IMG/VR virus record: IMGVR_UViG_3300028275_000006
Span: 124,001 to 188,000 of that record
Reading direction: 5' to 3' (one strand)
DNA length: 64,000 nt
A model generated the notes under the pieces. The model was not told where the DNA came from. It searched no databases and worked only from the letters and a program-made list of their open reading frames with translations. Of this stretch, positions 3,117 through 22,647 are shown one piece after another (the stretch's first letter is position 1; each line of letters begins with the position of its first letter). The position numbers and the translations under genes are program-made.

Positions 3117-3145
3117 ATTATATCTTCACTTCAATATTTTGTCAA
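3117..3145 (-). promoter_or_regulatory. sigma70-type promoter
   Basis: TTGACA-17nt-TATAAT. Confidence 0.85.
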
Positions 3146-3146
3146 T

Positions 3147-3221
3147 TGGTCCCGCTACTACGAATCGAACGTAGACTTACTCTTTAGGAGAGAGTCGTTC
3201 TATCCATTGAACTATAGCGAG
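3147..3221 (-). tRNA. tRNA-Arg(CCT)
   Basis: Cloverleaf, loop CT-CCT-AA, encoded CCA. Confidence 0.9.
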
Positions 3222-3231
3222 GGAGGGAATT

Positions 3232-3339
3232 TGGTGTGACCGGGAGGGTTCGAACCTCCAAGGACGGCATATCGCCTAGTCCCGACCCACGGAGTGTTTC
3301 ACAACAGTCCTGGAGCTCTGCCTATTCGCTCACGGTCAC
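3232..3339 (-). ncRNA. atypical 108-nt tRNA-like RNA with expanded anticodon/variable region
   Basis: Acceptor GTGACCG/CGGTCAC-A-CCA, D arm and T arm GGAGG-TTCGAAC-CCTCC; no canonical anticodon arm. Confidence 0.7.
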
Positions 3340-3345
3340 ATACTA

Positions 3346-3374
3346 AGTATATAACCTTTTCAGCAGTTTGTCAA
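3346..3374 (-). promoter_or_regulatory. sigma70-type promoter for the 3339/3221 RNAs
   Basis: TTGACA-17nt-TATACT. Confidence 0.8.
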
Positions 3375-3811
3375 CGGGTTATGAGGTATTCGTAGTTCAC
3401 TGTGTTGTCGTTTTCTTGCAACACACAGGCACCATTTCTGATATGGAACTTGTAGGCCATTTCAGTTTTTGGGCTAAGTGTTACAAAACGATTAACAGTT
3501 GGGAAAAGTTCTTTTATTTGATCCACTACACCAAAAAGTAGCTCTGCGGCCGCACCCGGCGCATAACTCCAAATTGTATAGAAGATTGCTGTAGTTGGTT
3601 CTGTGGGTGTTTTAGCCAAATCTTCAACAGTTGTTGGCACAAAATCGTGCAGACTAACACAGACCATTGCACGTGGTTTTTCGCCTTCTACAGTGGTGGC
3701 GACAAATCTGCTACCGCTAACACGAAATTCTTTGGGAATTTCTGGACGTACTGGATCATCCTTGATATAGTCAAGTAATGGATTAGTAGTTTCTCTGATT
3801 AATGTTAGCAT
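3371..3811 (-). CDS. hypothetical protein, possibly GNAT-like fold
   Basis: ORF preceded by TAAATA; FYTIWSY..GAA and RFVTLSP motifs; fold is a guess. Confidence 0.6.
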   Translation of the reverse strand: MLTLIRETTNPLLDYIKDDPVRPEIPKEFRVSGSRFVATTVEGEKPRAMVCVSLHDFVPTTVEDLAKTPTEPTTAIFYTIWSYAPGAAAELLFGVVDQIKELFPTVNRFVTLSPKTEMAYKFHIRNGACVLQENDNTVNYEYLITR

Positions 3812-3849
3812 ATAACTATTTAGCATTTAGTGGGCAGATTATGGTGTTA

Positions 3850-3924
3850 TGGTGGTAACGGTGAGATTCGAACTCACACCTTGCTCCGTATGAAGGAGGT
3901 GCACGACCATTATGCTACGTTACC
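3850..3924 (-). tRNA. tRNA-Met or Ile2 (CAT), elongator
   Basis: Cloverleaf, paired G1-C72, loop TT-CAT-AC, CCA. Confidence 0.85.
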
Positions 3925-3927
3925 AGA

Positions 3928-4163
3928 TTATTAGTAAGATGTCCCGAGAGTTTTGGTTTGGGTAAGGCCATCCGACGGTGCGATTCGTCCCTCTCTTTGT
4001 CTAGCCCAACATGAAGTTCTTGTAGTCTCAATCCGCTCACCTTGCACCGGCGCTTGATACATATACTCTACAGCATTAAAGTTTATAACTTCAATTAACA
4101 AAAACTTCCGATCTTTGTTAACTCCTTGCGGATGCTTTTAGAACCTTAACTACTTACTAATAA
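3928..4163 (-). ncRNA. candidate stem-closed ncRNA F
   Basis: 11-bp terminal inverted repeat TTATTAGTAAG/CTTACTAATAA; internal hairpins incl. CCGCAAGG. Confidence 0.45.
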
Positions 4164-4165
4164 AA

Positions 4166-4434
4166 GGGGTGGAGAGAGAAAGGCAAGTAATAGACTGGAC
4201 AATGTACAAGCGGGCTCTATAAAGATACCCTTAACAAGTCACAAGGCGCAAAGCACAGGGACCTGTATATTTCCAGTTAGCAACTCACAAAGTCGATTAA
4301 TATATAGAACTGGTTCACACAAGCACGAAACGTTTTCAAGACGTTTTGCCAGTAGTTGATGTTCGGTCTCTATAAGAGATCAAACCTTAGGCATGTAGCC
4401 TAAGTCTGTCTATCCTAATCTCCTTCTCTACTCC
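4166..4434. ncRNA. candidate stem-closed ncRNA G
   Basis: Ends complementary over ~30 nt (GGGGTGGAGAGAGAAAGG..TAGAC / GTCTATCCT..TCTCTACTCC); no convincing ORF. Confidence 0.45.
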
Positions 4435-4463
4435 AGGCTCGGGCTTTCGCCTTTGCCAAAACT

Positions 4464-4537
4464 TGGTTGCGGGACCTGGAATCGAACCAGGATCTAGAGC
4501 TTATGAGACTCTTGAGTTACCGTTTCTCTATCCCGCG
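4464..4537 (-). tRNA. initiator-type tRNA-fMet(CAT)
   Basis: C1:A72 mismatch, loop CT-CAT-AA, CCA. Confidence 0.85.
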
Positions 4538-4541
4538 ATAA

Positions 4542-4676
4542 CTTTATAGGTGCTCTCTGTTCGACTCGAACGAAACCTGCTGAGCTCCTTATCTTCCTGG
4601 CACTTTCGGTGGGTAGTCGACTTAGCACCTAACTCGTGTTATCCAGTGTAGTTCAGCTCAGAGAGCATTTATAAAG
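4542..4676 (-). ncRNA. candidate stem-closed ncRNA A with T-loop-like hairpin
   Basis: Terminal stem CTTTATAAATGCTCTCTG/CAGAGAGCACCTATAAAG; TTCG-TTCGAGT-CGAA hairpin. Confidence 0.5.
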
Positions 4677-4872
4677 TGTCTAGCCACTCCCACCACAGGA
4701 GCCCTAAACCGAGCTGTTACTCTGTCCACTAGCCTTTCCATTTAGACGGTGCTGAGGTCCGCCTTTGTGATTTCTCAAGTCGCTTTAAACAAGCCTTGCG
4801 GTAGATCCAATGCACCGAGCCATTAAGGTGTAGCAATTACCTAACTCTATCACGCTGAGTTAACGCGGGGTC
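4677..4872 (-). ncRNA. candidate structured ncRNA H sharing a motif with the GOLLD-like RNA
   Basis: TAGTGGACAGAGTAACAG (4714-4731) is 15/18 identical to 7212-7229; CCGCAAGG hairpin. Confidence 0.5.
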
Positions 4873-4874
4873 TG

Positions 4875-5447
4875 TTACAGTAAACCTTCTGCTTGCAGAA
4901 CTGCTTCTGTTTTGTCAGACAATTGGATAGTTGTCTGAACATTTAACTCTAGGATTTCATCCTGAAGTTTTTGTTTCTGCTTTTTAGCAGTTGCCACTCT
5001 ACGACGGAATCCGTCTAGATCTTCACGAGTGAGCACACTAGTGTCTACTGTGTCGTTGTAGCCATAGATGCTACGACGGTTTTCGCTTTTGTCGTTACGG
5101 ATCTTGTCCAAACGACCTGCTACAACCTTTGCGCTTTCGCGAACGGTCTTACTAGCCAATCCGTTGTAGAATTGGATTTGTTTTTCTAGATGTGCAACAT
5201 CGGCCAATCTAGTGTCGATTCTAACTTCTGTGTTAGCACCGCTGACACTTTTACGAATCTCGTAAAGTGCTTCCACTAACGCATCTCTGCGTGTAAGGTT
5301 GTCGCAGAGTGTTCCTGCAACTTTGGAAATTTCTTGTTCCGCTTCTTGGAACTCGTTGATTTTTACTGTGGTCTCAAACTGGAAACCTTTGACGGTATCG
5401 TTGATACTGTTCTGAAGTGCATTTGCCTTACGTAGGGAGATATTCAT
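4875..5447 (-). CDS. coiled-coil hypothetical protein
   Basis: Start MNISLRKANALQ with RBS; heptad-rich; loosely reminiscent of DIP1984-type proteins. Confidence 0.7.
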   Translation of the reverse strand: MNISLRKANALQNSINDTVKGFQFETTVKINEFQEAEQEISKVAGTLCDNLTRRDALVEALYEIRKSVSGANTEVRIDTRLADVAHLEKQIQFYNGLASKTVRESAKVVAGRLDKIRNDKSENRRSIYGYNDTVDTSVLTREDLDGFRRRVATAKKQKQKLQDEILELNVQTTIQLSDKTEAVLQAEGLL

Positions 5448-5513
5448 TTGTTTTTCCTTTAATGTTTCTATTATACAATCTTTTAAATCTAAATCAATGC
5501 CTTTTGGCAAAAC

Positions 5514-5589
5514 TGGAGCGGGAGACGAGGTTCGAACTCGCGACATTTACCTTGGCAAGGTAATGCTCTACCAACTGAGCTACTCCCGC
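5514..5589 (-). tRNA. tRNA-Gly(GCC)
   Basis: Canonical cloverleaf with CCA. Confidence 0.95.
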
Positions 5590-5637
5590 ATATGAAGAAC
5601 CTAAGGCAAAGTTTATAACTTATCCAAAGGCCATATA

Positions 5638-5713
5638 TGGTACACGGTACGGGAATCGAACCCGTCTTACTGACGTGAAAGGCCAGTGTCCTAAACCGAT
5701 AGACGAACCGTGC
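5638..5713 (-). tRNA. tRNA-Glu(TTC)
   Basis: Canonical cloverleaf with CCA. Confidence 0.95.
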
Positions 5714-5719
5714 ATTACT

Positions 5720-5795
5720 TGGCTCCCCAGGGTGGGATCGAACCACCGACACCCTGATTAACAGTCAGGTGCTACTACCGCTGAGCTACTAGGGA
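5720..5795 (-). tRNA. tRNA-Asn(GTT)
   Basis: Canonical cloverleaf with CCA. Confidence 0.95.
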
Positions 5796-5802
5796 ATAAA
5801 CT

Positions 5803-5877
5803 TGGTACCTGGTGACAGTTTCGAACTGCCGACCCTCTCGGTGTAAACGAGACGCTCTACCACTGAGCTAACCAGGC
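5803..5877 (-). tRNA. tRNA-Val(TAC)
   Basis: Canonical cloverleaf with CCA. Confidence 0.95.
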
Positions 5878-5887
5878 AAACTAACAT

Positions 5888-5964
<77 letters not shown>

Positions 5965-5969
5965 AATGA

Positions 5970-6045
5970 TGGAGCGGGAGGCGAGAGTTGAACTCGTCTA
6001 TTTCAGTTTGGAAGACTGACGTGTAACCACAAACACTTCACCCGC
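5970..6045 (-). tRNA. tRNA-Gly(TCC)
   Basis: Cloverleaf, loop CT-TCC-AA, CCA. Confidence 0.9.
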
Positions 6046-6051
6046 ATATTT

Positions 6052-6135
6052 TGGTGCCCCAGGAGAGACTCGAACTCTCACGGCTCTCGCCACTGGCTTC
6101 TAAGACCAGCGTGTCTACCATTCCACCACCAGGGC
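6052..6135 (-). tRNA. tRNA-Leu(TAG)
   Basis: Class II cloverleaf with long variable arm, CCA. Confidence 0.95.
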
Positions 6136-6136
6136 A

Positions 6137-6940
6137 TTAACTGACAATACTATTTAAGTATTCCTGAATTGTCGTTGCAATTTTTTCTTGCACAGACAAT
6201 TTAATTTTTGCATTCTCACCATTAGCACTCATATACTGTTTTCCGTATTCAGTACAATCTATACCAGTGTGCATAAACTCTTTAAAAATTTCTGAGTTGT
6301 CAGGATTAGGATCTCCAAACCTAACAGTCGTCCATTTAATATTTTGAGAATCTAAAAACTTAATTAACATATTGTAACCATTTCTATGTCTACGAATATG
6401 CCAATCTTTGCTTTGACTTTTTTGAAAAGCAATACCGTTTAATCGCTTTTTATGAACTTCAATTGGATATCTATCTGGATTCCATTCTCCGTCTACATAA
6501 TTTTCACGTTCAAATACATATCGTTGATTGTTATATTTGAAACTGTGTGCTATATGACTAAACGTGTAATCTGTAACTAATACATGATCCGGTTTAGGAT
6601 TCTCTGCTAGGTACTGTTTTAATCTTTTGTGATGACCTATAAAATGTCCACCGTTAATAGATATATTAACTACATTGGAAACATTTAAGAAATTAGGCCA
6701 TGCGGCTTTTTGTTCTTCTTCCCATAGATAATGCCAAACAACATTTTCCATATTGCCATTGGGCATAGGTGTTGTAACATTGTTTTCTTTTCTATGTTTT
6801 AGATACCATTTAAAAACACTTCTAAAATCATTATGGAAACGTAGACTCCAAGTCCTCGGAGCATCGTCGTTGACTATGTCACCAGCCAAACAATTATTGC
6901 CATTACTTTGGCAATCTCCTAAAATTAAAAGTGTTTTCAT
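6137..6940 (-). CDS. hypothetical AT-rich protein with GDSL-like N-terminus, inserted in tRNA array
   Basis: 267 aa ORF; LILGDCQSNG resembles the SGNH block I motif. Confidence 0.65.
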   Translation of the reverse strand: MKTLLILGDCQSNGNNCLAGDIVNDDAPRTWSLRFHNDFRSVFKWYLKHRKENNVTTPMPNGNMENVVWHYLWEEEQKAAWPNFLNVSNVVNISINGGHFIGHHKRLKQYLAENPKPDHVLVTDYTFSHIAHSFKYNNQRYVFERENYVDGEWNPDRYPIEVHKKRLNGIAFQKSQSKDWHIRRHRNGYNMLIKFLDSQNIKWTTVRFGDPNPDNSEIFKEFMHTGIDCTEYGKQYMSANGENAKIKLSVQEKIATTIQEYLNSIVS

Positions 6941-6954
6941 ATTAATAGTTATCT

Positions 6955-7031
6955 TGGCGCACCGTAGGGGACTTGAACCCCTGGCCTCCGACGTGACAGG
7001 CCGGCGCTCTGACCAACTGAGCTAACGGTGC
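6955..7031 (-). tRNA. tRNA-Asp(GTC)
   Basis: Canonical cloverleaf with CCA. Confidence 0.95.
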
Positions 7032-7036
7032 AAATT

Positions 7037-7116
7037 CTATTCTGAAACACACTAACCAACTACCAGAAGCATTTATAATGCCGTTATTCGGTTCGAGCTA
7101 ATGTGTTTTAGAATAG
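7037..7116 (-). ncRNA. candidate stem-closed ncRNA C
   Basis: 20-nt terminal stem CTATTCTAAAACACATTAGC/GTTAGTGTGTTTCAGAATAG with one A:C mismatch. Confidence 0.5.
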
Positions 7117-8005
7117 TGCTAACGCTGAGATTATACGTTAGCCAATAGTGCCTCTAGCATTATAGTCAGCCTTGCGAGCCAACCTTCTCTAGACATCCAC
7201 ATAAGCCATTACTGTACCTATGTCCACTATCAGCATCGCCGTTTTTAAAGACAGGCAGTAGTCTTGTCGCCATATGCTATTCTACGCTATCTACTCCGTT
7301 GACCTTGCGAGCCATTCAGCGGCGCTAACCACTTACGAAACTTCCAGCATAAACAGATTTCACCTTGCGAGCTACGTCTGACTCGATTACCTTGCGGCTC
7401 GAGTATTAGATGCTTTTCACATATGACCGAGGCAGTCTTTGCATTTTATAATCGATAGTTGGGATCGAACCAACAGTCCATTGCTTAAGAGGCAATTGCG
7501 TTACCATTACGCTATATCAAACCTACCGCGATGAGCTGCCTCTGTTGCTCAATAACCTTTTGGATTACTGAATACAACTCACCACATACCTTTTGTCTCG
7601 CGGACTACTCAGTGATATTTCACGATCAATGTCCTGCATCAAAACAGTCCACTAACCATTAATATTGCATACAAGCCCTTAGGAGCGACCCCTTGGACAA
7701 ATACACTACCCTTTCTCATACCAATTCGCAAGTTGGTTTTGTTAGGAAGTCAGCACCACCCGTTACTTTTCATGCACCCTGGTTCCCTTGCGGGCCAGTC
7801 GATACACATTCTTTCCCTAACACTTGCTTCATTGTTACATCCACCGGTCTTCTCAGTGAACGCTACCTCGCGGTAGTGAGCAGGCTTGTTTACATGAACC
7901 ATTACTGGCGGAGTTGCGTAGGCTTACCTCCTTTGGGTTGATCACTCAACTTATTCTTCGTCAACGGCGAACCGCCAACAGGATAATAAACTACCCTTAA
8001 ATTTT
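7115..8005 (-). ncRNA. giant structured ncRNA, GOLLD-like, containing a tRNA
   Basis: ~900 nt without credible ORF; many GNRA-capped hairpins (CTCGCAAGG x3, CCGCAAGG x2, CCGCGAG x2); inside a phage tRNA cluster; boundaries approximate. Confidence 0.7.
7450..7521 (-). tRNA. tRNA-Lys(CTT) embedded in giant ncRNA, no encoded CCA
   Basis: Intact D, anticodon (ATTGC-CT-CTT-AA-GCAAT) and T arms; weak acceptor stem. Confidence 0.8.
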
Positions 8006-8171
8006 TACCATTAAAAAATAACATTACACCCTATGGGATGAAACGTATTTCTGAGTGGAGTTCGATTCTCCTCATAAGCCATTGTTCACGGTTTTCTCAG
8101 AAGGGTAAGATGGCCTTATCCTTCATAAGTCTATGCGTCCATAGACGATACCCGTCAATGCTATTTCTTAA

Positions 8172-8257
8172 TGGTGGATGCGGCTGGAGTCGAACCAGCA
8201 GTGCCGTAAGGCGGCGGATTTACAGTCCACTGGGGTTACCAATTTTCCTACACATCC
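8172..8257 (-). tRNA. tRNA-Tyr(GTA)
   Basis: Class II cloverleaf with CCA. Confidence 0.95.
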
Positions 8258-8344
8258 ATATCTGCTTGAAATTTTTAAAGAACTAGGTTAATTTCTTAAC
8301 TAGTCTCTATTGTATATGAACTTTAGAAACTAGTCAAGACATTT

Positions 8345-8439
8345 TGGCAGTGAGTAAGGGATTCGAACCCTTGATCCCCGTTTTTGCAGGAATGCCTTCT
8401 TAGCAGGAAGGTGCCTTCGACCAGCTCGGCCAACTCACT
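8345..8439 (-). tRNA. tRNA-Ser(GCT)
   Basis: Class II cloverleaf with CCA. Confidence 0.95.
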
Positions 8440-8447
8440 ATATTTGT

Positions 8448-8476
8448 ATTATACGATCAACTGTTAAACAAGTCAA
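8448..8476 (-). promoter_or_regulatory. internal sigma70-type promoter in tRNA array
   Basis: TTGACT-17nt-TATAAT; a similar TTGACT/TACAAT site lies near 8310-8338. Confidence 0.75.
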
Positions 8477-8483
8477 CACCTTT

Positions 8484-8573
8484 TGGCCGAAGCGGTGAGA
8501 TTCGAACTCACGGACCCTTTCGGATCGTCTGTTTTCAAGACAGGTGCAATAAACCGGACTCTGCCACGCTTCG
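8484..8573 (-). tRNA. tRNA-Ser(TGA)
   Basis: Class II cloverleaf with CCA. Confidence 0.95.
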
Positions 8574-8619
8574 TTGTTTTACTTGTATAATTCGTTGTAG
8601 ATAGAATCTGCTACAAATG

Positions 8620-8697
8620 TGGTACCCCTGCTCCGATTCGAACGGAGAGAACTTCTCCTTTTGAGAGAGACGACTTTACCAATTTGTCCACAGGGGT
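8620..8697 (-). tRNA. tRNA-Leu(CAA), short variable loop
   Basis: Loop CT-CAA-AA, 6-nt variable region, CCA. Confidence 0.85.
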
Positions 8698-8702
8698 ATA
8701 TC

Positions 8703-8776
8703 TGGTGCTCAAGGAAAGAATCGAACTTTCGATTGTGTCGTACCAAGACACTGGTATACCATTTACCTACAAGAGC
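8703..8776 (-). tRNA. tRNA-Thr(GGT)
   Basis: Loop TT-GGT-AC, two acceptor mismatches, CCA. Confidence 0.8.
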
Positions 8777-8778
8777 CT

Positions 8779-8850
8779 TGGCGCCTCTGAGTAGATTCGA
8801 ACTACTATAACCTGGTTTAGAAGACCTGGCACTGCTCCATCAGCAGAGGC
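8779..8850 (-). tRNA. tRNA-Arg(TCT), reduced D arm
   Basis: 72 nt, loop CT-TCT-AA, CCA. Confidence 0.8.
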
Positions 8851-8851
8851 A

Positions 8852-8928
8852 TGGTACCCTTGGTTGGATTCGAACCTACACACAACGGATTTTAAATCCA
8901 TTCGCATTACCAATTAGCGTACAAGGGC
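8852..8928 (-). tRNA. tRNA-Leu(TAA), short variable loop
   Basis: Loop TT-TAA-AA, 5-nt variable region, CCA. Confidence 0.85.
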
Positions 8929-8935
8929 ATAATTA

Positions 8936-9011
8936 TGGTGCCGCCCCTTGGGATCGAACCAAGTTCCTCGGTGCTTCAAACCGGTGCAATGACCACATTT
9001 GCTAAAGCGGC
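8936..9011 (-). tRNA. tRNA-Phe(GAA)
   Basis: Cloverleaf, loop TT-GAA-GC, CCA. Confidence 0.9.
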
Positions 9012-9017
9012 GATATT

Positions 9018-9092
9018 TGGGGTGAAGCCGGGAATCGAACCCTGCCTTACTGTTTCACAGACAGCCGTGCGGACCACTACACTAGCAACACC
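9018..9092 (-). tRNA. tRNA-His(GTG)
   Basis: G-1:C73, loop CT-GTG-AA, CCA. Confidence 0.9.
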
Positions 9093-9094
9093 AT

Positions 9095-9171
9095 TGGCCG
9101 GCCCTGAGAGACTCGAACTCCCAACCTCCAGTTTCGAAGACTGGCACTCTAATCCATTGAGTTAAGGACCG
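9095..9171 (-). tRNA. tRNA-Arg(TCG)
   Basis: Cloverleaf, A20, CCA. Confidence 0.92.
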
Positions 9172-9178
9172 TTAAAAT

Positions 9179-9252
9179 TGGCAGGCCTACCAGGACTCGA
9201 ACCTGGAACGACTGAGTCAAAGTCAGTTGTGTTACCATTACACCATAGGCCA
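9179..9252 (-). tRNA. tRNA-Gln(TTG)
   Basis: Cloverleaf, weak 1:72 pair, CCA. Confidence 0.93.
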
Positions 9253-9262
9253 ACAGATTGAA

Positions 9263-9475
9263 TTTGTAAGTAGTTGCCCCATCGTTATAGCAACCATTCA
9301 CCCATGTATATAAAGCCGGCTGGGACTCGGTACGTCACTTGGGATACTAGTCCAGTTAGCAACCAATCTGCAGGGATCTTCCGATCCCCCGGGAGTTGAA
9401 CCCGTCCCCTTTTACTATTAAGGTAGTTCGAACTTACCTACAATAGCGTGACATTCTCTTGCTGACACTTACAAA
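9263..9475 (-). ncRNA. candidate stem-closed ncRNA E
   Basis: Terminal TTTGTAAGT/ACTTACAAA; internal CGGG-TTCAACT-CCCG T-arm-like hairpin and GGGATCGGAAGATCCC hairpin. Confidence 0.5.
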
Positions 9476-9478
9476 ACT

Positions 9479-9553
9479 TGGTGCCCCAGGATGGAATCGA
9501 ACCACCACACCCTGCTTACAAAACAGGACCTCTACCACTAAGGATACAAGGGC
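9479..9553 (-). tRNA. tRNA-Thr(TGT)
   Basis: Cloverleaf with CCA. Confidence 0.92.
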
Positions 9554-9558
9554 AAAAT

Positions 9559-9636
9559 TGGTCTCCACGGTACGATTCGAACGTACAGCCTCCTGACTCC
9601 AGATCAGGCCGTCTACCAGATTGACATTACGCAGAG
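9559..9636 (-). tRNA. tRNA-Pro(TGG) variant with C33 and A37
   Basis: Stem CCTGA/TCAGG, loop TC-TGG-AG, CCA. Confidence 0.75.
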
Positions 9637-9646
9637 ATAAAAATAA

Positions 9647-9722
9647 TTGCGACCGAAGGACTCGAACCTTCGCGGTAATCTAGAATGCCCCGGCAAGGCC
9701 GGTTAACCCACCATTGTCGCAA
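9647..9722 (-). pseudogene. tRNA-like element without CCA or valid anticodon arm
   Basis: TTGCGAC/GTCGCAA stem plus perfect T arm GAAGG-TTCGAGT-CCTTC. Confidence 0.5.
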
Positions 9723-9725
9723 ATT

Positions 9726-9800
9726 TGGTGGAGGCCGAGGAAATCGAATCCTTCTAGACATCTTCCTTGCAAGGGAAGACCGTAGCCCACTACTGCCCCC
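9726..9800 (-). tRNA. tRNA-Ala(TGC), reduced D loop
   Basis: G3:U70, loop CT-TGC-AA, D hairpin GTAG-TGGG-CTAC, CCA. Confidence 0.8.
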
Positions 9801-9885
9801 AAATTGGTGTTAGTTTCTATACCACCCATTGAAACTAACAAACATTGAGAGAACATGGATGAACCCACAAGATCTCTATTTGCTC

Positions 9886-9960
9886 TGGTATAGCGTACGG
9901 GGATCGAACCCGCCTAGTCACCTTGAAAGGGTGATGACCTCCCCAGAAGTCGAACGCTAT
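9886..9960 (-). tRNA. tRNA-Glu(TTC), second copy
   Basis: Cloverleaf, loop CT-TTC-AA, CCA. Confidence 0.9.
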
Positions 9961-9966
9961 GTAAAT

Positions 9967-10040
9967 TGGTTCCTGGACCGAGAATTGAACTCAGAATGAC
10001 CGGTTATCAGCCGATTGTTATACCATTTAACTATCCAGGA
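9967..10040 (-). tRNA. tRNA-Ile(GAT)
   Basis: Cloverleaf with CCA. Confidence 0.93.
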
Positions 10041-10130
10041 ATAATACTATACAAAAAGAAACTAACGACAATGCGCTATGCACCCAGAGTCTATAGTTCC
10101 TGGCTGTGGTTAGTTTGTTTTTATACACTA

Positions 10131-10225
10131 CCATATGGAAGCACTCTTATGCCTTTTTCGTCATAAGATGGTGGCCCGTCCTTACTACTGACGCTATGCG
10201 ACCAGTTAAGAATGCTTTCATATGG
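10131..10225 (-). ncRNA. candidate stem-closed ncRNA B
   Basis: CCATATGAAAGCATTCTTA/TAAGAGTGCTTCCATATGG with one A:C mismatch; begins at the CCA of tRNA-Lys(TTT). Confidence 0.5.
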
Positions 10226-10297
10226 TAGGGGCACAGAGAATCGAACTCTGATTTACGGGTTAAAAGCCCGCTACTTTAACCATTAAGTTATACCCCC
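10223..10297 (-). tRNA. tRNA-Lys(TTT)
   Basis: Cloverleaf with CCA. Confidence 0.93.
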
Positions 10298-10300
10298 ATA

Positions 10301-10376
10301 TGGTCCCTGCTGTGAGATTCGAACTCACACCTCATTGATTAAGAGTCAAGTGCGCTACCATTGACGCTAAACAGGG
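10301..10376 (-). tRNA. tRNA-Lys(CTT)
   Basis: Cloverleaf with CCA. Confidence 0.92.
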
Positions 10377-10438
10377 TTGTACGTATTGATTTGATTTTAC
10401 GTGCCAACCCTAGACCATACGGGAGATCTAGAGTGACA

Positions 10439-10459
10439 CTAACGTTTAGCACGTTTCAT
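10439..10459 (-). CDS. micro-ORF MKRAKR-amber
   Basis: Strong SD AAGGAGAG; TAG stop leads into a long hairpin. Confidence 0.4.
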   Translation of the reverse strand: MKRAKR

Positions 10460-10471
10460 GCTACTCTCCTT

Positions 10472-10534
10472 TTAATATTTTTTCAAAACTTGATACAACA
10501 CGAACATTATAACTAACACTACAAGTACTGCCAT
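10472..10534 (-). CDS. 20-aa hydrophobic micro-protein MAVLVVLVIMFVLYQVLKKY
   Basis: SD TAAGGAG, single TM-like stretch. Confidence 0.55.
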   Translation of the reverse strand: MAVLVVLVIMFVLYQVLKKY

Positions 10535-10547
10535 AATATTCTCCTTA

Positions 10548-10637
10548 TGGTCCCCCGTTGAGGAATCGAACCTCATCCTGGACCTTATCTAGATTAATCG
10601 GTTATAAGCCGACCTGCTCTCCATGAGCTAACGGGGG
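10548..10637 (-). tRNA. tRNA-Ile(TAT) with 21-nt variable insertion
   Basis: Stem GTCGG/CCGAT, loop CT-TAT-AA, 90 nt, CCA. Confidence 0.8.
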
Positions 10638-10645
10638 ATATAACC

Positions 10646-10723
10646 TGGAGCAACGGGTCAGATTTGAACTGACGGTTTTACGGATTTGCAATCCGTTGCA
10701 TTGGGCCTCTCTGCCACCGTTGC
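10646..10723 (-). tRNA. tRNA-Cys(GCA)
   Basis: Cloverleaf, U73, CCA. Confidence 0.93.
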
Positions 10724-10728
10724 ATTAT

Positions 10729-10803
10729 TGGCGTACCCCCAGGGACTCGAACCCCGACTAGCAGTTTTGGAGACTGTCGTGCTGCCATTAACACTAGGGA
10801 TAC
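10729..10803 (-). tRNA. tRNA-Trp(CCA)
   Basis: Cloverleaf, G73, CCA. Confidence 0.93.
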
Positions 10804-10826
10804 ATAACACTCTCTTTCGAAAGTGT

Positions 10827-10888
10827 GTATTAAAGCATACTACTCATCGGCTACTGCCATTTGATTGTTCGGCAGTATGCTTTAATAC
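10827..10888 (-). ncRNA. candidate stem-closed ncRNA D
   Basis: Perfect 15-bp stem GTATTAAAGCATACT/AGTATGCTTTAATAC around a 32-nt loop. Confidence 0.45.
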
Positions 10889-11003
10889 GCTACCTTTTTA
10901 CACATTCTAGTTATCGCCTAGAACTTACCATCCGGTAGGCCGCCCACATTAAGCCCATGTTTTACGTGCAGGCAGGGTCGCGTTCCCTATAACACGTTTG
11001 AGA

Positions 11004-11174
11004 TTAGTCTTGCTCTACGAGCTCAACTTCTCTCTTGTAAAGTGCTGTGTGATAAGCACGAGCACGATTAAACTTTTCTTCGATGAGTTTTTCAAAAGCA
11101 TCGTCGTCCAGTTCATGCTCACTTAGCACTTTGGCACTTTTCTGTTTTCTAAAATCTTCAAAATTCATTTTCAT
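11004..11174 (-). CDS. 56-aa hypothetical protein (not in ORF track)
   Basis: MKMNFEDFRKQKSAKVLSEHELDDDAFEKLIEEKFNRARAYHTALYKREVELVEQD; first gene after the attenuator. Confidence 0.6.
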   Translation of the reverse strand: MKMNFEDFRKQKSAKVLSEHELDDDAFEKLIEEKFNRARAYHTALYKREVELVEQD

Positions 11175-11192
11175 TTCCAAATCTTACAAAAC

Positions 11193-11224
11193 AAAAAACC
11201 CTGGGTTTTTAGTCCAGGGTTCTT
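11193..11224 (-). terminator. intrinsic terminator of putative attenuator
   Basis: AAGAACCCTGG-ACTAAAAAC-CCAGGGTTTTTT. Confidence 0.8.
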
Positions 11225-11247
11225 AAAAGTTATTGTGTATGTTACTG

Positions 11248-11409
11248 TTAACTTACACGATCCTCCAAGAACCCTACGATAATCTCAGGTGTACGATCAT
11301 TACCTAGACCTAGCCCGACATTACTAAACTGTGACCAATAGGCGGACATACATGCCGGCGCTTTGGCTTGTTTAGATATCGTTTGTCTATGTAAACTAAT
11401 CGTTTGCAT
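11248..11409 (-). CDS. 53-aa putative leader peptide
   Basis: MQTISLHRQTISKQAKAPACMSAYWSQFSNVGLGLGNDRTPEIIVGFLEDRVS; contains the antiterminator segment 11267-11276. Confidence 0.6.
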   Translation of the reverse strand: MQTISLHRQTISKQAKAPACMSAYWSQFSNVGLGLGNDRTPEIIVGFLEDRVS

Positions 11410-11467
11410 TTTGTTTCTCTTTTTCTTACCTTCTTAAAAGTTGTAGCGGAATTGCTACTGTCTTTGT

Positions 11468-11589
11468 ATTGTAATGCCTTTCAACATCTTTGTCAACATC
11501 TTTTTGTCTTTTTTGGACAACCTAATGTTTTGTGGAAAGTGATTGCTTTACAATATTTGTATTATATGAGTATTTATAAAACTTGTCAA
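11468..11589 (-). promoter_or_regulatory. tandem sigma70 promoters driving leader and tRNA array
   Basis: TTGACA-17-TATAAT (11561-11589) and TTGACA-17-TACAAT (11468-11496). Confidence 0.85.
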
Positions 11590-11646
11590 TACCTATGTTG
11601 AAATGTGGCGATTTTGCAACATTTTGAAAACCGCCACACTTTTGTA

Positions 11647-12165
11647 TTAACCGTTTAGTACTTTTGCTAGACTATTGATCACTGCGGCAATACGTCCGAT
11701 GTCACGAAGTTGTTCTACGGTGTAGCCTTCCTTCTTCAATGTTTCGTAGTGCGCCTTAACACAGAAATGACACTTGCCAACAATACTTGCGGCAAGACTG
11801 TATGCTTCAAAGCGAGCCTTGGTAGTTCCGCCATGGCTTGCGATAGCGTTCATGCGTAACTGTGCTGGCAAGCCCTTTAGTTGCTCATCGTCTGCCATCT
11901 CAACATATGGATACCAAACGTTGTTCTGTGCCATAATTGAACCAGCGGTCATCGCGGCATCACGTTCTTTTTCGTCTGTGATGTTGCTCATGATGAAACT
12001 AATCAATTTTCCATTGCCGGTGCTCATAGCCGCGGCCAATGCACAACCTTCTGCTTCTACAACATCTGATAGTGTACTACGCTTGATTACTGCATCCAGA
12101 TTTAGTTTTGTGTCCTTGGCGTATTCTGGTAAACCTTCTTTTAATTGATCAACCCATTGTGTCAT
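11647..12165 (-). CDS. ahpD: alkyl hydroperoxide reductase AhpD
   Basis: N-terminal LPEYAKDTKLNL, SIVGKCHFCVKAH CxxC motif; same operon as ahpC. Confidence 0.9.
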   Translation of the reverse strand: MTQWVDQLKEGLPEYAKDTKLNLDAVIKRSTLSDVVEAEGCALAAAMSTGNGKLISFIMSNITDEKERDAAMTAGSIMAQNNVWYPYVEMADDEQLKGLPAQLRMNAIASHGGTTKARFEAYSLAASIVGKCHFCVKAHYETLKKEGYTVEQLRDIGRIAAVINSLAKVLNG

Positions 12166-12599
12166 AGTGTGTCTCCTTTAGTTGCTTTGGCTATGCTTTT
12201 ATAGCCTTTGTAAGTTGGGTGTACGTGATCCGGGCTAGTTTCGTGCTTTCTAGCATCTATTACAAAGTCCTTGTATTTTTCTGCTACTGCAAGAACTGCC
12301 CGTCTCTTATCGTCCTTGATATTAGGTACAATCCAATAAACACGAGTGGCGTCTACTAGTTGTCTTAGACTGTCTAGTTCCTCCACTGTGTTTATTTTTG
12401 CTGTATCGTTTGACCCTAGACTAATGATTACATTTTTTGCCTGTGTAGTGCCCTGAGTGTGTAACACATGACGATTAACATAGTCATAACTGTTAATGCC
12501 ACTCTTAGCACGAGTAACACATTCTGTACGAACTTGTCCTACTCCTACTGCTAGGCTATCGCCTAGGATTAAACAATCAAGCATAATTGATCCTATCAA
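12162..12599 (-). CDS. SGNH/GDSL hydrolase
   Basis: GDSL, SLGSND and DHVHP motifs. Confidence 0.8.
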   Translation of the reverse strand: MIGSIMLDCLILGDSLAVGVGQVRTECVTRAKSGINSYDYVNRHVLHTQGTTQAKNVIISLGSNDTAKINTVEELDSLRQLVDATRVYWIVPNIKDDKRRAVLAVAEKYKDFVIDARKHETSPDHVHPTYKGYKSIAKATKGDTL

Positions 12600-15926: not shown

Positions 15927-16000
15927 TGGTGCGCTAGACAGGAATCGAACCTGCTATCGGGAGTTTAGAAGTCCCTGCCTATCCATTGAGCTTCAAGCGC
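15927..16000 (-). tRNA. Arg(TCT)-derived tRNA; best-paired register gives anticodon CTA
   Basis: 74 nt; GGGAC-TTCTAAA-CTCCC arm; A20; CCA. Confidence 0.7.
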
Positions 16001-21632: not shown

Positions 21633-21712
21633 GTGATCTTTCTATGAAATAAAACTGCGATACTGTGTATTATAGGCTCGGACAGGGCATCTGTCAATGT
21701 GTTTGGTAAAAT

Positions 21713-21735
21713 AAAAAAGGGCCCGAAGGCCCTTT
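21713..21735 (-). terminator. terminator after tmRNA
   Basis: AAAGGGCC-TTCG-GGCCC hairpin followed by T6. Confidence 0.8.
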
Positions 21736-21739
21736 GGTT

Positions 21740-22066
21740 GTTTGGGTTACAAGGTAAGTCCTACCCCGGAGTTGCAGTTTCTTAGGCTGCTACTAGACCA
21801 TTGTCGGCTGTGAAGCCTTCAACAGTGAAGTACTCAAATGTAGATGCGTTTGCATTTACTAGTTTTGCTTGATTTACGGTCATCGCCTACCGTGTTGCCG
21901 TCTCTACTATCTACCCCTGTCGAAACCATGGCAGGCCCATCATAAAAACACAATACCAAAGTAAATTTACAATGAATACCAAAGTAAATTTATGTCCTTA
22001 TGGTGGACCTGGCGGGAGTCGAACCCGCGTCCAGAAGTCCTTCGCTTTGAAGGGATTACAACAATT
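21740..22066 (-). ncRNA. ssrA: circularly permuted (two-piece) tmRNA
   Basis: Acceptor piece ending GGTTCGACTCCCGCCAGGTCCACCA (22001) precedes coding piece starting GGGCCTG (21938); G3:U70; tag frame 21782-21853 ANASTFEYFTVEGFTADNGLVAA*. Confidence 0.9.
21952..21992. repeat. 18-nt tandem direct repeat in tmRNA intervening segment
   Basis: AATACCAAAGTAAATTTA at 21952-21969 and 21975-21992. Confidence 0.9.
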
Positions 22067-22068
22067 CT

Positions 22069-22647
22069 TTAAACGCCTGCCTTTGCTAATGTGCCAAATA
22101 TCCAAGGTTTTGGATCTAAGTCAATTGTCCAAGATGTCGGTTCATTTCTCATATCTTTTTTGTACACAATATTTATTTGGTCGTGTGTTAGTTTGACTAA
22201 GAAGCCGTCTGTTAATTGTTTTAGATTAGCCTTAACTGTTGCGTAATCTACAAAGGCAACAGCGAATGTTCCTTTAATTTGGACTATCATTAAATGATTA
22301 AAAACTTTGTCTAGTGTAGTTCTTTGATTCTTACTTTCGTAAACATTTTTTAATTTAAGACTGATTGTCTTTTTAGGAGTTCCTGACTTTGCGTAGAACA
22401 AAGGTTCGTTGCCAGTTTTAACTTCTACGTCGCCATTGGTCCAATCGGTAAATTTTATATCGTAATCGCGAACGTCAGTCCACTCGATGTTCTTTTTATG
22501 ATTAGATAATTGCATTGCCGCAATAATGAATTTTTCTTTCATCATTCGATTTGTGGATTCATTTAATACTGTCTGATGACAGATGTTATTACAAGCATCT
22601 GAAAACTTGTCAATATCTACCCAATCTAAAAATTCATTGTACTGCAT
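22069..22647 (-). CDS. hypothetical protein, possible PD-(D/E)xK nuclease fold
   Basis: AT-rich; D..GDVEVKT motif. Confidence 0.55.
   Translation of the reverse strand: MQYNEFLDWVDIDKFSDACNNICHQTVLNESTNRMMKEKFIIAAMQLSNHKKNIEWTDVRDYDIKFTDWTNGDVEVKTGNEPLFYAKSGTPKKTISLKLKNVYESKNQRTTLDKVFNHLMIVQIKGTFAVAFVDYATVKANLKQLTDGFLVKLTHDQINIVYKKDMRNEPTSWTIDLDPKPWIFGTLAKAGV

What the first reader, a model, noticed from the sequence alone, without database searches (positions are those of the whole stretch)
11193..11409. Leader-peptide attenuator gating the whole tRNA/ncRNA operon
Seen: two consensus promoters, a 53-codon leader ORF, then an intrinsic terminator. The terminator 5' arm AAGAACCCTG (11215-11224) is also complementary over 10 nt to TAGGGTTCTT inside the leader (11267-11276), so the two pairings are mutually exclusive. 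Known: this is the logic of ribosome-mediated attenuation. Inference: normal translation lets the terminator form, whereas stalling (host tRNA cleavage, ribosome toxins) lets the antiterminator form and switches on the 33 tRNAs and ncRNAs. The leader is not enriched in one amino acid, which fits a general translation-stress sensor. This is my best candidate for an undescribed system, together with the RNA ligase, tmRNA and ncRNAs.
Basis: partly seen in the sequence, partly recalled or inferred. Interest (0 to 1): 0.85.

Follow-up and report, generated by a model that had tools for sequence, protein, structure and literature searches.

The report
Leader-ORF attenuator heading phage tRNA array
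A large freshwater phage has, in front of its block of about 30 tRNA genes, a short translated reading frame followed by two competing RNA hairpins, a layout conserved and co-varying in about 60 related phages, which probably lets the phage tune tRNA production to how well translation is running.

Summary
On the minus strand there are two near-consensus promoters, a 53-codon ORF, an intrinsic terminator, and an alternative pairing that shares the terminator's 5' arm. That pairing is 15 bp long, not 10.

I found 97 related loci (64 distinct) in viral and freshwater metagenome contigs:
- All keep tandem promoters, an open ORF of 43-54 codons and a TAA stop at the apex of the antiterminator hairpin.
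- In all 54 sequences analysed the antiterminator is more stable (mean -25.8 kcal/mol) than the terminator (-14.9).
- The antiterminator arm, the shared segment and the terminator 3' arm co-vary three ways, linked by wobble intermediates.
- All 37 loci with enough flank have a same-strand tRNA array downstream.

The ORF stays open but does not evolve like a protein, and its conserved blocks are the strands of a further long hairpin.

The best reading is a ribosome-coupled transcription attenuator: translation to the stop codon allows termination, and absent or lagging translation allows read-through. "Gating the whole operon" is overstated because near-consensus promoters lie inside the array. 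The proposed stress triggers are untested. I class it as a new variant of a known kind.

The parts
11561..11589 (-). Distal promoter P1 (TTGACA-17-TATAAT)
   Evidence: 12/12 match. Every relative has 2-3 tandem 11-12/12 promoters upstream of the ORF.
11468..11496 (-). Proximal promoter P2 (TTGACA-17-TACAAT)
   Evidence: 11/12 match. In relatives the proximal -10 box ends 47-60 nt before the ATG, or 6-10 nt before it in leaderless variants.
11443..11458 (-). 5'-terminal hairpin of the P2 transcript (GTAGC-aattcc-GCTAC)
   Evidence: Seen. A hairpin of different sequence occupies the same place in other clades (alignment). It is absent in leaderless variants. A stabilising role is inferred only.
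11248..11409 (-). Leader ORF1, 53 codons, stop TAA
   Evidence: Open in all 59 distinct relatives, against 3.7 and 5.7 stops per sequence in the other two frames; shuffles stay open in 4.8% of cases. ATG is invariant. There is no codon periodicity in its variation. No Pfam or PHROG family matches. AlphaFold gives pLDDT 58, pTM 0.14.
11294..11402 (-). Hairpin 1: long hairpin inside ORF1, starting 8 nt into the ORF
   Evidence: dG -33.2 kcal/mol, z = -2.9. The same fold appears in all three clades. Its strands are the conserved 'peptide' blocks. Compensatory changes occur in L183, L175 and L179 and the apex differs between clades. 90% of cells are paired in register against 34-45% when slid. Covariation is modest.
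11262..11276 (-). Antiterminator 5' arm (A), TAGGGTTCTTGGAGG, within the last 10 codons of ORF1
   Evidence: The core starts 21-28 nt before the stop codon in 53 of 54 relatives.
11235..11258 (-). Inner hairpin of the antiterminator, with the ORF1 stop codon (11250-11248) at its apex
   Evidence: Fold. Hairpins of different sequence sit at the same place in relatives. The stop codon lies in the apical part in nearly all.
11214..11229 (-). Shared segment (B): 3' arm of the antiterminator and 5' arm of the terminator
   Evidence: It co-varies with both partners.
11193..11213 (-). Terminator loop (11213-11205), 3' arm (C, 11204-11197) and U tract (11198-11193)
   Evidence: RNAalifold consensus of 12 pairs with compensatory changes at two positions: CG 33 / AU 25, and AU 33 / UA 25.
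11004..11174 (-). ORF2, 54-56 aa (probable start ATG at 11168), the first cargo of read-through
   Evidence: Present in 53 of 64 relatives with a KLIxxKFxRA motif. Its variation shows normal coding periodicity. It starts about 24 nt after the U tract, with no promoter-like site between.
10821..10999 (-). Structured RNA element directly upstream of the first tRNA
   Evidence: 22 distinct relatives; 39 consensus pairs, 22 with compensatory changes. No Rfam match. It follows the terminator directly where ORF2 is absent.
3147..10803 (-). tRNA array (31 tRNA genes, with GOLLD RNA embedded), the downstream cargo
   Evidence: All 37 related loci with enough flank have a same-strand array starting 0.3-1.1 kb after ORF1.

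Best explanation
This is a ribosome-coupled transcription attenuator at the head of a phage tRNA array.

Proposed sequence of events:
1. Two strong promoters fire.
2. The transcript carries a short ORF whose last ~10 codons form the 5' arm (A) of a long hairpin. The ORF's UAA stop codon sits at the apex of that hairpin.
3. The 3' arm of that hairpin (B) is also the 5' arm of an intrinsic terminator (B:C plus a U tract).
4. A:B is transcribed first and is about 11 kcal/mol more stable than B:C. An untranslated or slowly translated transcript therefore folds into the antiterminator, and RNA polymerase reads on into ORF2, a structured RNA and the tRNAs.
5. A lead ribosome that keeps pace with the polymerase melts A and the inner hairpin and sits on the stop codon while C is being made. 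B is then free to pair with C, and transcription stops.

The net effect would be negative feedback: poor translation capacity gives more phage tRNA, and good capacity gives less.

The long hairpin inside the ORF (hairpin 1) probably times this decision. It could act as a pause hairpin that a ribosome must release, or by closing the start region once it has formed.

Shown: the anatomy, its conservation, the covariation and the energetics. Inferred: dependence on translation, the sign of the response, the role of hairpin 1 and the physiological signal.
For: 1. The anatomy is confirmed in the window.

2. 97 related loci, 64 of them distinct, keep it.

3. The 7-bp A:B core pairs in 54 distinct sequences:
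- At one position the pair is G-C in 27 and A-U in 23. At another it is C-G in 47 and U-A in 7.
- Overall 86% of cells are paired in register, against 20-59% when slid and 81.7 +/- 0.5% in shuffles (maximum 83.1% of 1000).

4. The three-way states for A / B / C are (G,C,G) 27, (A,U,A) 20, (A,U,G) 3 and (G,U,G) 1. This is a path through wobble pairs that keeps both helices intact.

5. The changes in arm A are non-synonymous (for example Phe to Ser). The ORF's C-terminal tail has at least 12 different versions, while the GGAG pairing motif is kept in different reading frames.

6. Terminator covariation is seen.

7. Energetics:
- Antiterminator mean -25.8 kcal/mol, with the A:B core present in 54/54 folds.
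- Terminator mean -14.9 kcal/mol.
- The full-length minimum-energy fold uses A:B in 49/54.
- So the conserved terminator can act only if something removes A.

8. That something is most simply the ribosome:
- The ORF is open in 59/59 and the ATG is invariant. In nine relatives and in L017 the start codon lies at the transcript's 5' end.
- The stop codon is TAA in 54/54.
- Arm A starts 21-28 nt before the stop, B starts 19-31 nt after it, and the U tract 45-56 nt after it.

9. ORF1 does not evolve like a protein:
- Entropy at codon positions 1/2/3 is 0.76/0.69/0.80, against 1.10/0.90/1.35 for ORF2.
- AlphaFold finds no confident fold.

10. ORF2 has no promoter of its own, so read-through must occur.

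11. 37 of 37 loci have a tRNA array downstream.

12. A divergent member, L017, with different arm sequences has the same design.
Against: - There are no transcript or translation data. Dependence on the ribosome is inferred from geometry alone.
- The Shine-Dalgarno region is weak or distant in many members (alignment).
- There is no run of regulatory codons, so no specific signal can be named.
- The conserved blocks of ORF1 are constrained at the nucleotide level. Hairpin 1 could equally be a binding site for a protein or RNA that sets the switch independently of translation.
- Covariation rests on a few positions and a limited number of independent events. A, B and C lie within about 90 nt and can be exchanged together by recombination (L119/L120 look like such a case).
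- Internal promoters limit how much of the array is gated.
Confidence: 0.62

Rival explanations
1. A switch set by a trans-acting factor or ligand. Hairpin 1 and the nucleotide-invariant blocks would form a sensor domain (protein-binding, tRNA-binding or riboswitch-like) that decides between antiterminator and terminator. Translation of the ORF would be secondary, or only a way of resetting the RNA.
For: - Conserved amino acids keep the identical codon in 81% of cases in ORF1 against about 50-55% in ORF2. His is CAT in 58/58 although the genome uses CAT only 50% of the time.
- There is no codon periodicity in ORF1's variation.
- A long conserved hairpin sits just upstream of the expression platform.
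- The terminator loop sequence is also conserved.
Against: - The ORF is open in all 59 distinct members, with an invariant ATG, a TAA stop and fixed spacing from stop to arms. A pure RNA sensor does not need any of these.
- Hairpin 1 does not overlap arm A, so no direct route from sensor to platform is visible.
- No Rfam family, including T-box, matches even at E <= 5.
Confidence: 0.15
2. A fixed, unregulated partial terminator. The A:B / B:C competition would only set a constant ratio between abundant short leader transcripts and fewer read-through transcripts, tuning the output of very strong promoters without sensing anything.
For: - Tandem consensus promoters occur in all members.
- ORF2 and the structured RNA need read-through.
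- The energies of the two folds lie in a narrow range across the family.
Against: - With A:B favoured both kinetically and thermodynamically, an untranslated transcript would hardly terminate at all. A conserved, co-varying terminator would then serve no purpose.
- The conserved ORF and stop-codon geometry would be unexplained.
Confidence: 0.1
3. An ordinary small protein gene with its own terminator. The A:B helix would be an mRNA stability or RNase III processing element that separates the mRNA from the tRNA precursor, and downstream genes would be served by leak-through and internal promoters.
For: - ORF1 is conserved in about 75 protein clusters.
- The A:B hairpin with its inner hairpin is long, about 25 bp with internal loops.
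- Internal promoters exist in the array.
Against: - ORF1's variation lacks coding periodicity, unlike its neighbour ORF2.
- No confident fold is predicted.
- Its conserved 'motifs' are the strands of hairpin 1.
- The C-terminus is hypervariable and tracks the terminator arms.
- A processing site has no reason to share and co-vary with the terminator arm.
Confidence: 0.08
4. Chance complementarity next to a terminator.
For: None beyond the fact that short complements occur at random.
Against:: the pairing is conserved, compensated and stronger than at any other terminator in the window, and 0 of 1080 shuffles were as stable.
Confidence: 0.01

Closest known systems
Leader-peptide (ribosome-mediated) attenuators of amino-acid operons: trpL, hisL, pheL, and pheM of pheST (own knowledge; pheL also in PMC3082878)
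   Same: - A promoter-proximal short ORF, then an antiterminator that shares a strand with an intrinsic terminator.
- The ribosome's position decides the fold.
- An upstream hairpin inside the ORF could act like the 1:2 pause hairpin.
   Different: - Three competing segments rather than four.
- No run of regulatory codons.
- The ORF is long (43-54 codons) and is constrained at the nucleotide level.
- No translation gives read-through here, whereas in trp it gives termination.
- The cargo is non-coding RNA (tRNAs) in a virus, not biosynthetic enzymes.
Antibiotic-responsive, ribosome-stalling attenuators upstream of resistance genes (for example the mef/mel leader, PMC4335068; others from own knowledge)
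   Same: - They act as a general sensor of translation trouble: a ribosome held up on a leader ORF lets the antiterminator form and switches on downstream genes.
- No amino-acid-specific codon run is needed.
   Different: - Those leaders are short, and stalling depends on a drug together with the nascent peptide.
- No stalling motif could be identified here.
- The cargo here is tRNAs.
pyrBI attenuator (own knowledge)
   Same: It reads out how closely the lead ribosome follows RNA polymerase.
   Different: The sign is opposite. In pyrBI a closely coupled ribosome prevents terminator formation, because the leader ORF runs through the terminator. Here the ORF stops 19-31 nt before the shared arm B (about 30 nt before the terminator stem in the window), and coupling should favour termination.
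T-box riboswitches (own knowledge; Rfam model tested)
   Same: An antiterminator/terminator switch linked to tRNA biology.
   Different: - No T-box match even at a permissive threshold.
- No specifier loop or T-box sequence.
- The element is an open, evidently translated ORF.
- The host is probably proteobacterial (inferred from sigma-70 type promoters and a beta-proteobacterial type tmRNA).

Membership tests
Ribosome-mediated (leader-peptide) transcription attenuator | Short ORF with a start codon close to the promoter, upstream of the regulated genes | tested here: met
   53 codons, 58 nt after the P2 -10 box. The ATG is invariant. The ORF is open in 59/59 distinct relatives, and some are leaderless.
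Ribosome-mediated (leader-peptide) transcription attenuator | Intrinsic terminator between the leader ORF and the cargo | tested here: met
   An 8-12 bp G+C-rich stem followed by U5-6, with compensatory changes.
Ribosome-mediated (leader-peptide) transcription attenuator | Antiterminator that is mutually exclusive with the terminator | tested here: met
   B is shared by both helices. A, B and C co-vary three ways. The antiterminator is more stable in 54/54.
Ribosome-mediated (leader-peptide) transcription attenuator | The ORF overlaps the alternative structures, so that ribosome position selects the fold | tested here: met
   Arm A lies in the last ~10 codons. The stop codon is at the apex of the antiterminator. 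Spacings are conserved.
Ribosome-mediated (leader-peptide) transcription attenuator | Run of codons for the sensed amino acid (classical biosynthetic type only) | tested here: not met
   No amino acid or codon is repeated in tandem. This excludes the classical amino-acid-specific subtype but not the mechanism.
Ribosome-mediated (leader-peptide) transcription attenuator | Read-through depends on translation of the leader | not testable with these tools
   This needs reporter, in vitro or Term-seq experiments.
T-box riboswitch | Match to the T-box covariance model, with specifier loop and T-box sequence | tested here: not met
   No T-box hit on 10750-11700 at E <= 5, nor at the gathering score on the whole window.
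Any described RNA family (Rfam 15) | Covariance-model match | tested here: not met
   Only chance-level hits in 10750-11700.
Known protein family for ORF1 | Pfam or PHROG profile match, or a confident fold | tested here: not met
   No Pfam or PHROG family. The 75 homologous clusters are all unnamed or 'hypothetical'. pLDDT 58.

The most novel reading that the evidence does not exclude
The element would be an autogenous translation-capacity sensor for a viral tRNA supply. The lead ribosome on a structured, codon-constrained leader ORF reports whether decoding or free ribosomes are limiting. It might do so through hairpin-1-timed coupling to RNA polymerase. The phage would raise or lower transcription of its tRNA array, and of an undescribed structured RNA, accordingly. 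This would be the first attenuator known to control a tRNA operon, and a regulatory layer for phage tRNAs during host tRNA depletion or cleavage.
Probability: 0.35. Interest if true: 0.85.

Novelty: new variant of a known kind. Interest (0 to 1): 0.7.

Why it matters
Phage tRNA arrays are currently explained as codon compensation or as replacements for host tRNAs destroyed by defence nucleases (PMC10264068, PMC11555353). How their expression is controlled is essentially unknown.

A conserved leader-ORF attenuator at the head of the array in a whole lineage of jumbo phages would mean that tRNA output is regulated by feedback from translation itself. No attenuator of this kind in front of tRNA genes turned up in my literature searches.

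It also gives a compact, testable switch of about 230 nt with natural compensatory variants. It points as well to two further undescribed parts of the same unit: a conserved small protein (ORF2) and a structured RNA of about 180 nt.

Tried and rejected
- GenBank phages, blastn of 10800-12200: no match. All relatives came from IMG/VR and metagenome contigs.
- Bacterial and archaeal genomes: no ORF1 relative. The element appears to be specific to phages.
- Rfam at the gathering score and at E <= 5: no family for the leader or for the downstream RNA.
- Pfam and PHROGs for ORF1 and ORF2: nothing usable.
- RNAalifold on the whole leader alignment recovered only the terminator. On the ORF part across all clades it recovered nothing.
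- MAFFT alignments (A5, A6) put the shared arm in different registers in different clades, because the terminator stems differ by one base pair. The count of structure pairs could therefore not be applied to A:B. I counted pairs on an alignment anchored on GGGT/ACCC, with slide and shuffle controls of my own.
- The covariance-model alignment of hairpin 1 (A9) also collected reverse-strand hits. Only plus-strand rows were counted. The covariation found is modest, so hairpin 1 rests mainly on conserved pairing potential and a few compensatory cases.

Ideas considered and not adopted:
- A T-box-like UGGN bulge: no model match.
- The conserved GGAG 7-13 nt before the stop codon acting as an internal Shine-Dalgarno sequence that holds the terminating ribosome: possible, but it is also simply the inner helix strand.
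- Covariation of the Pro codon (CCA/CCU) with the terminator 3' arm: probably a clade marker.
- A nascent-peptide arrest motif at NDRTPE: no known motif, and these codons are a strand of hairpin 1.
- A conserved antisense or alternative-frame ORF: stops occur in all other frames.

Full report
**What is in the window.** All genes around the finding lie on the minus strand. Upstream are an AhpC-like gene, a GDSL-like gene and an AhpD/CMD-like gene (13135-11647). The order after that is:
- two promoter-like sites, TTGACA-17-TATAAT at 11589-11561 (12/12) and TTGACA-17-TACAAT at 11496-11468 (11/12);
- a small 5' hairpin at 11458-11443;
- a 53-codon ORF at 11409-11248;
- a G+C-rich hairpin followed by T6 at 11221-11193;
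- a second small ORF at 11174/11168-11004;
- about 180 nt of unassigned sequence;
- 31 tRNA genes from 10803 down to 3147, with a GOLLD RNA among them.

They pair with nine Watson-Crick pairs and one U.G. The pairing runs on to 15 bp (11276-11262 with 11229-11215), and the minimum-free-energy fold of the region chooses it over the terminator. The consensus scan did not list the terminator only because its loop is 9 nt and the scan allows 8.

**Relatives.** GenBank phages hold nothing similar. IMG/VR and JGI/ENA metagenome contigs, many from freshwater samples and up to 364 kb long, gave 97 loci with a complete homologue of the ORF. Of these, 64 are distinct. The protein database holds 75 clusters, all unnamed, from metagenomes only. 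No bacterial or archaeal genome has the ORF. The window also encodes Hsp70, ribonucleotide reductase and other jumbo-phage cargo. This is a lineage of large uncultivated phages. The sigma-70 type promoters and the beta-proteobacterial type permuted tmRNA suggest a proteobacterial host, which is an inference.

**The switch is conserved and compensated.** I anchored each of 54 distinct sequences on the invariant GGGU of arm A and ACCC of the shared segment B.
- The 7-bp core pairs throughout.
- One flanking position is G-C in 27 sequences and A-U in 23. Another is C-G in 47 and U-A in 7.
- In register 86% of cells are paired. When the partner is slid by 1-3 nt this drops to 20-59%. With shuffled partners it is 81.7 +/- 0.5%, with a maximum of 83.1% in 1000 shuffles.

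The terminator B:C shows its own compensatory changes.

The base of B that varies pairs with A in one fold and with C in the other. The observed triples are (G,C,G) 27, (A,U,A) 20, (A,U,G) 3 and (G,U,G) 1. This is a mutational path on which both helices stay paired through wobble pairs. Three sequences have a mismatch at that position in A:B.

The changes in A are non-synonymous; the window has Phe where most relatives have Ser. The last 6-10 residues of the peptide come in at least a dozen unrelated versions. The GGAG stretch that forms the inner part of the helix is kept in different reading frames. In this part of the ORF, selection therefore acts on the RNA and not on the peptide.

A more divergent member found beside an AhpD gene (L017) has different arm sequences (A GGGGGUUCU, B AGAGCCCCGG, C CCGGGGUUU). 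It has the same design, including the stop codon in the inner hairpin.

**Energetics.**
- The antiterminator hairpin averages -25.8 kcal/mol and contains the A:B core in all 54 sequences.
- The terminator hairpin averages -14.9 kcal/mol.
- The full-length minimum-energy fold uses A:B in 49 of 54.
- Shuffling the 5' arm costs 13.5 kcal/mol on average and never matched the native stability (0/1080).

Because A and B are also transcribed before C, a naked transcript should read through. A terminator that is nevertheless conserved and compensated implies that something removes A at the right moment.

**Why the ribosome is the likely agent.**
- The ORF is open in all 59 distinct nucleotide versions. 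The other two sense frames carry 3.7 and 5.7 stops per sequence, and shuffled bodies stay open only 4.8% of the time.
- The ATG is invariant.
- In nine relatives and in L017 the proximal -10 box ends 6-10 nt before the ATG. The start codon is then at or next to the 5' end of the transcript.
- The stop codon is TAA in 54 of 54 and sits at the apex of the antiterminator.
- Arm A begins 21-28 nt before the stop in 53 of 54. B begins 19-31 nt after it, and the U tract 45-56 nt after it.

A ribosome with the stop codon in its A site covers the inner half of arm A and abuts its core. This rests on the established footprint of roughly 15 nt on either side of the P site. B would then be free when C emerges. 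This is the same reasoning as for the classical attenuators, but it is inference, not measurement.

**The ORF is a leader, not a protein gene.**
- Entropy of variation at codon positions 1, 2 and 3 is 0.76, 0.69 and 0.80 bits in ORF1. In the neighbouring ORF2 of the same genomes it is 1.10, 0.90 and 1.35.
- Where the amino acid is conserved between distant genomes, the codon is identical in 81% of cases in ORF1 against 49-55% in ORF2.
- His is CAT in 58 of 58 although the phage uses CAT and CAC equally. Arg is AGA in 56 of 56.
- ORF1's codon adaptation (0.57) is below that of all 43 genes of the window (0.66-0.80).
- AlphaFold with a 47-sequence alignment gives pLDDT 58, pTM 0.14 and no fold.

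Much of the nucleotide-level constraint is explained by a further structure. Nucleotides +8 to +116 of the ORF (11402-11294) fold into one long hairpin in every clade (dG -21 to -33 kcal/mol). Its strands are the conserved 'peptide' blocks: UUACAUAGAC with GUCUAnnUAA, GCCAA with UUGG, and the NDR codons UGAUCG with the 5' base.
- Compensatory versions occur in the most divergent members, for example AUUCGUU with AACGAAU in L183.
- The apex differs by clade.
- Within the largest clade, 90% of cells pair in register against 34-45% when slid, but there is too little variation for significant covariation.
- Across clades the counts are 85% paired, with a few compensated pairs.

I regard hairpin 1 as probable. 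Its role is open. It could be a pause hairpin that synchronises ribosome and polymerase, a block to late initiation because it starts 8-12 nt after the AUG, or a binding site for a factor.

**What is gated.**
- ORF2 starts about 24 nt after the U tract with its own Shine-Dalgarno-like motif and no promoter-like site before it. It is present in 53 of 64 relatives and evolves like a protein. Read-through must therefore happen.
- After ORF2, or directly after the terminator where ORF2 is missing, comes a conserved structured RNA (10999-10821). It has 39 consensus pairs, 22 of them compensated among 22 sequences, and no Rfam match.
- The first tRNA follows.
- All 37 related loci with enough flank carry a same-strand tRNA array beginning 0.3-1.1 kb after ORF1, and none has tRNAs upstream.
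- The leader, the switch and the structured RNA each occur once in the window.
- The array contains further promoter-like sites on the same strand: 8476-8448 and 3374-3346 at 11/12, and 10534-10506, 8337-8309 and 5497-5470 at 10/12.

The attenuator therefore gates transcription coming from the two strong leader promoters. It cannot be said to gate the whole array.

**Comparison with known systems.** The logic is that of ribosome-mediated attenuation. The features that define that class and could be tested here are met. The exception is a run of regulatory codons, which defines only the amino-acid-specific subtype. Translation dependence itself cannot be tested with these tools. The element differs from trp-type leaders in four ways:
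- it has three competing segments;
- it reads through when untranslated;
- its leader is long and structured;
- it controls tRNA and non-coding RNA genes in a virus.

It resembles drug-responsive leader attenuators in acting as a general sensor, and pyrBI in reading ribosome-polymerase coupling, though with the opposite sign. Literature searches found no description of an attenuator before a phage tRNA array. Work on phage tRNAs discusses their function but not their control.

**Verdict.** This is a new variant of a known kind of regulator. It has real interest because of its cargo, its conservation across a phage lineage, and the unexplained nucleotide-level constraint on the leader.

Noticed in passing
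window 10821-10999 (-): A structured RNA of about 180 nt lies between ORF2 and the first tRNA. It is conserved in at least 22 distinct relatives, with 22 of 39 consensus pairs compensated. It has no Rfam match and occurs once in the window. It looks like an undescribed RNA class tied to phage tRNA arrays.
   Followed up: partly
window 11004-11174 (-): ORF2, a 54-56 aa helical-looking protein with a KLIxxKFxRA motif, is present in 53 of 64 relatives and shows normal coding periodicity. It has no promoter of its own and no known family (one weak PHROG hit, E = 0.08).
   Followed up: partly
window 7122-7585 (-): A GOLLD RNA (Rfam RF02032, 207 bits) lies inside the tRNA array, with tRNA-Lys (CTT; 7449-7522) embedded in it.
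   Followed up: no
window 21712-22154 (-): A permuted (two-piece) tmRNA of beta-proteobacterial type, with tag peptide ANASTFEYFTVEGFTADNGLVAA. This is a clue to the host.
   Followed up: no
window 15927-16000 (-): A tRNA with anticodon CTA (ARAGORN calls it Pyl), that is, a candidate amber suppressor. The leader ORF ends in TAA in all 54 relatives analysed and never in TAG.
   Followed up: no
L135, L136, L139, L145, L149, L156, L175, L179, L183, L017: In these relatives the proximal -10 box ends only 6-10 nt before the leader ATG, so the leader mRNA would be leaderless. The 5' UTR hairpin seen in the window is then absent.
   Followed up: partly
window 8448-8476, 8309-8337, 10506-10534, 5470-5497, 3346-3374, 3117-3145 (-): Promoter-like sites (10-12 of 12 matches) lie inside and just after the tRNA array. 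This suggests several transcription units within it.
   Followed up: no
alignment A4 columns 220-223 with 325-328 (window about 11289-11286 with 11204-11201): The third base of the conserved Pro codon (CCA/CCU) co-varies with the terminator 3' arm (A-U 33, U-A 26). It may be a clade marker, or a fourth pairing partner in the switch.
   Followed up: no
window 11205-11213 (-) and relatives: The 9-nt terminator loop (A[C/U]UAAAAAC) is at least 90% conserved across the family. This is unusual for a terminator loop and unexplained.
   Followed up: no
window 11600-11637 (-): A conserved hairpin (GTGGCG...CGCCAC) directly after the AhpD-like gene and before promoter P1. It is possibly the terminator of the upstream AhpC / GDSL / AhpD unit.
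   Followed up: no
window 10548-10637 (-): tRNA-Ile with anticodon TAT is 90 nt long, and relatives have 90-92 nt versions. This is unusually long for an Ile tRNA.
   Followed up: no
window 28432-30483 and 42987-44852 (-): The phage encodes a CHASE2-adenylate/guanylate cyclase protein and a full-length Hsp70 (DnaK).
   Followed up: no
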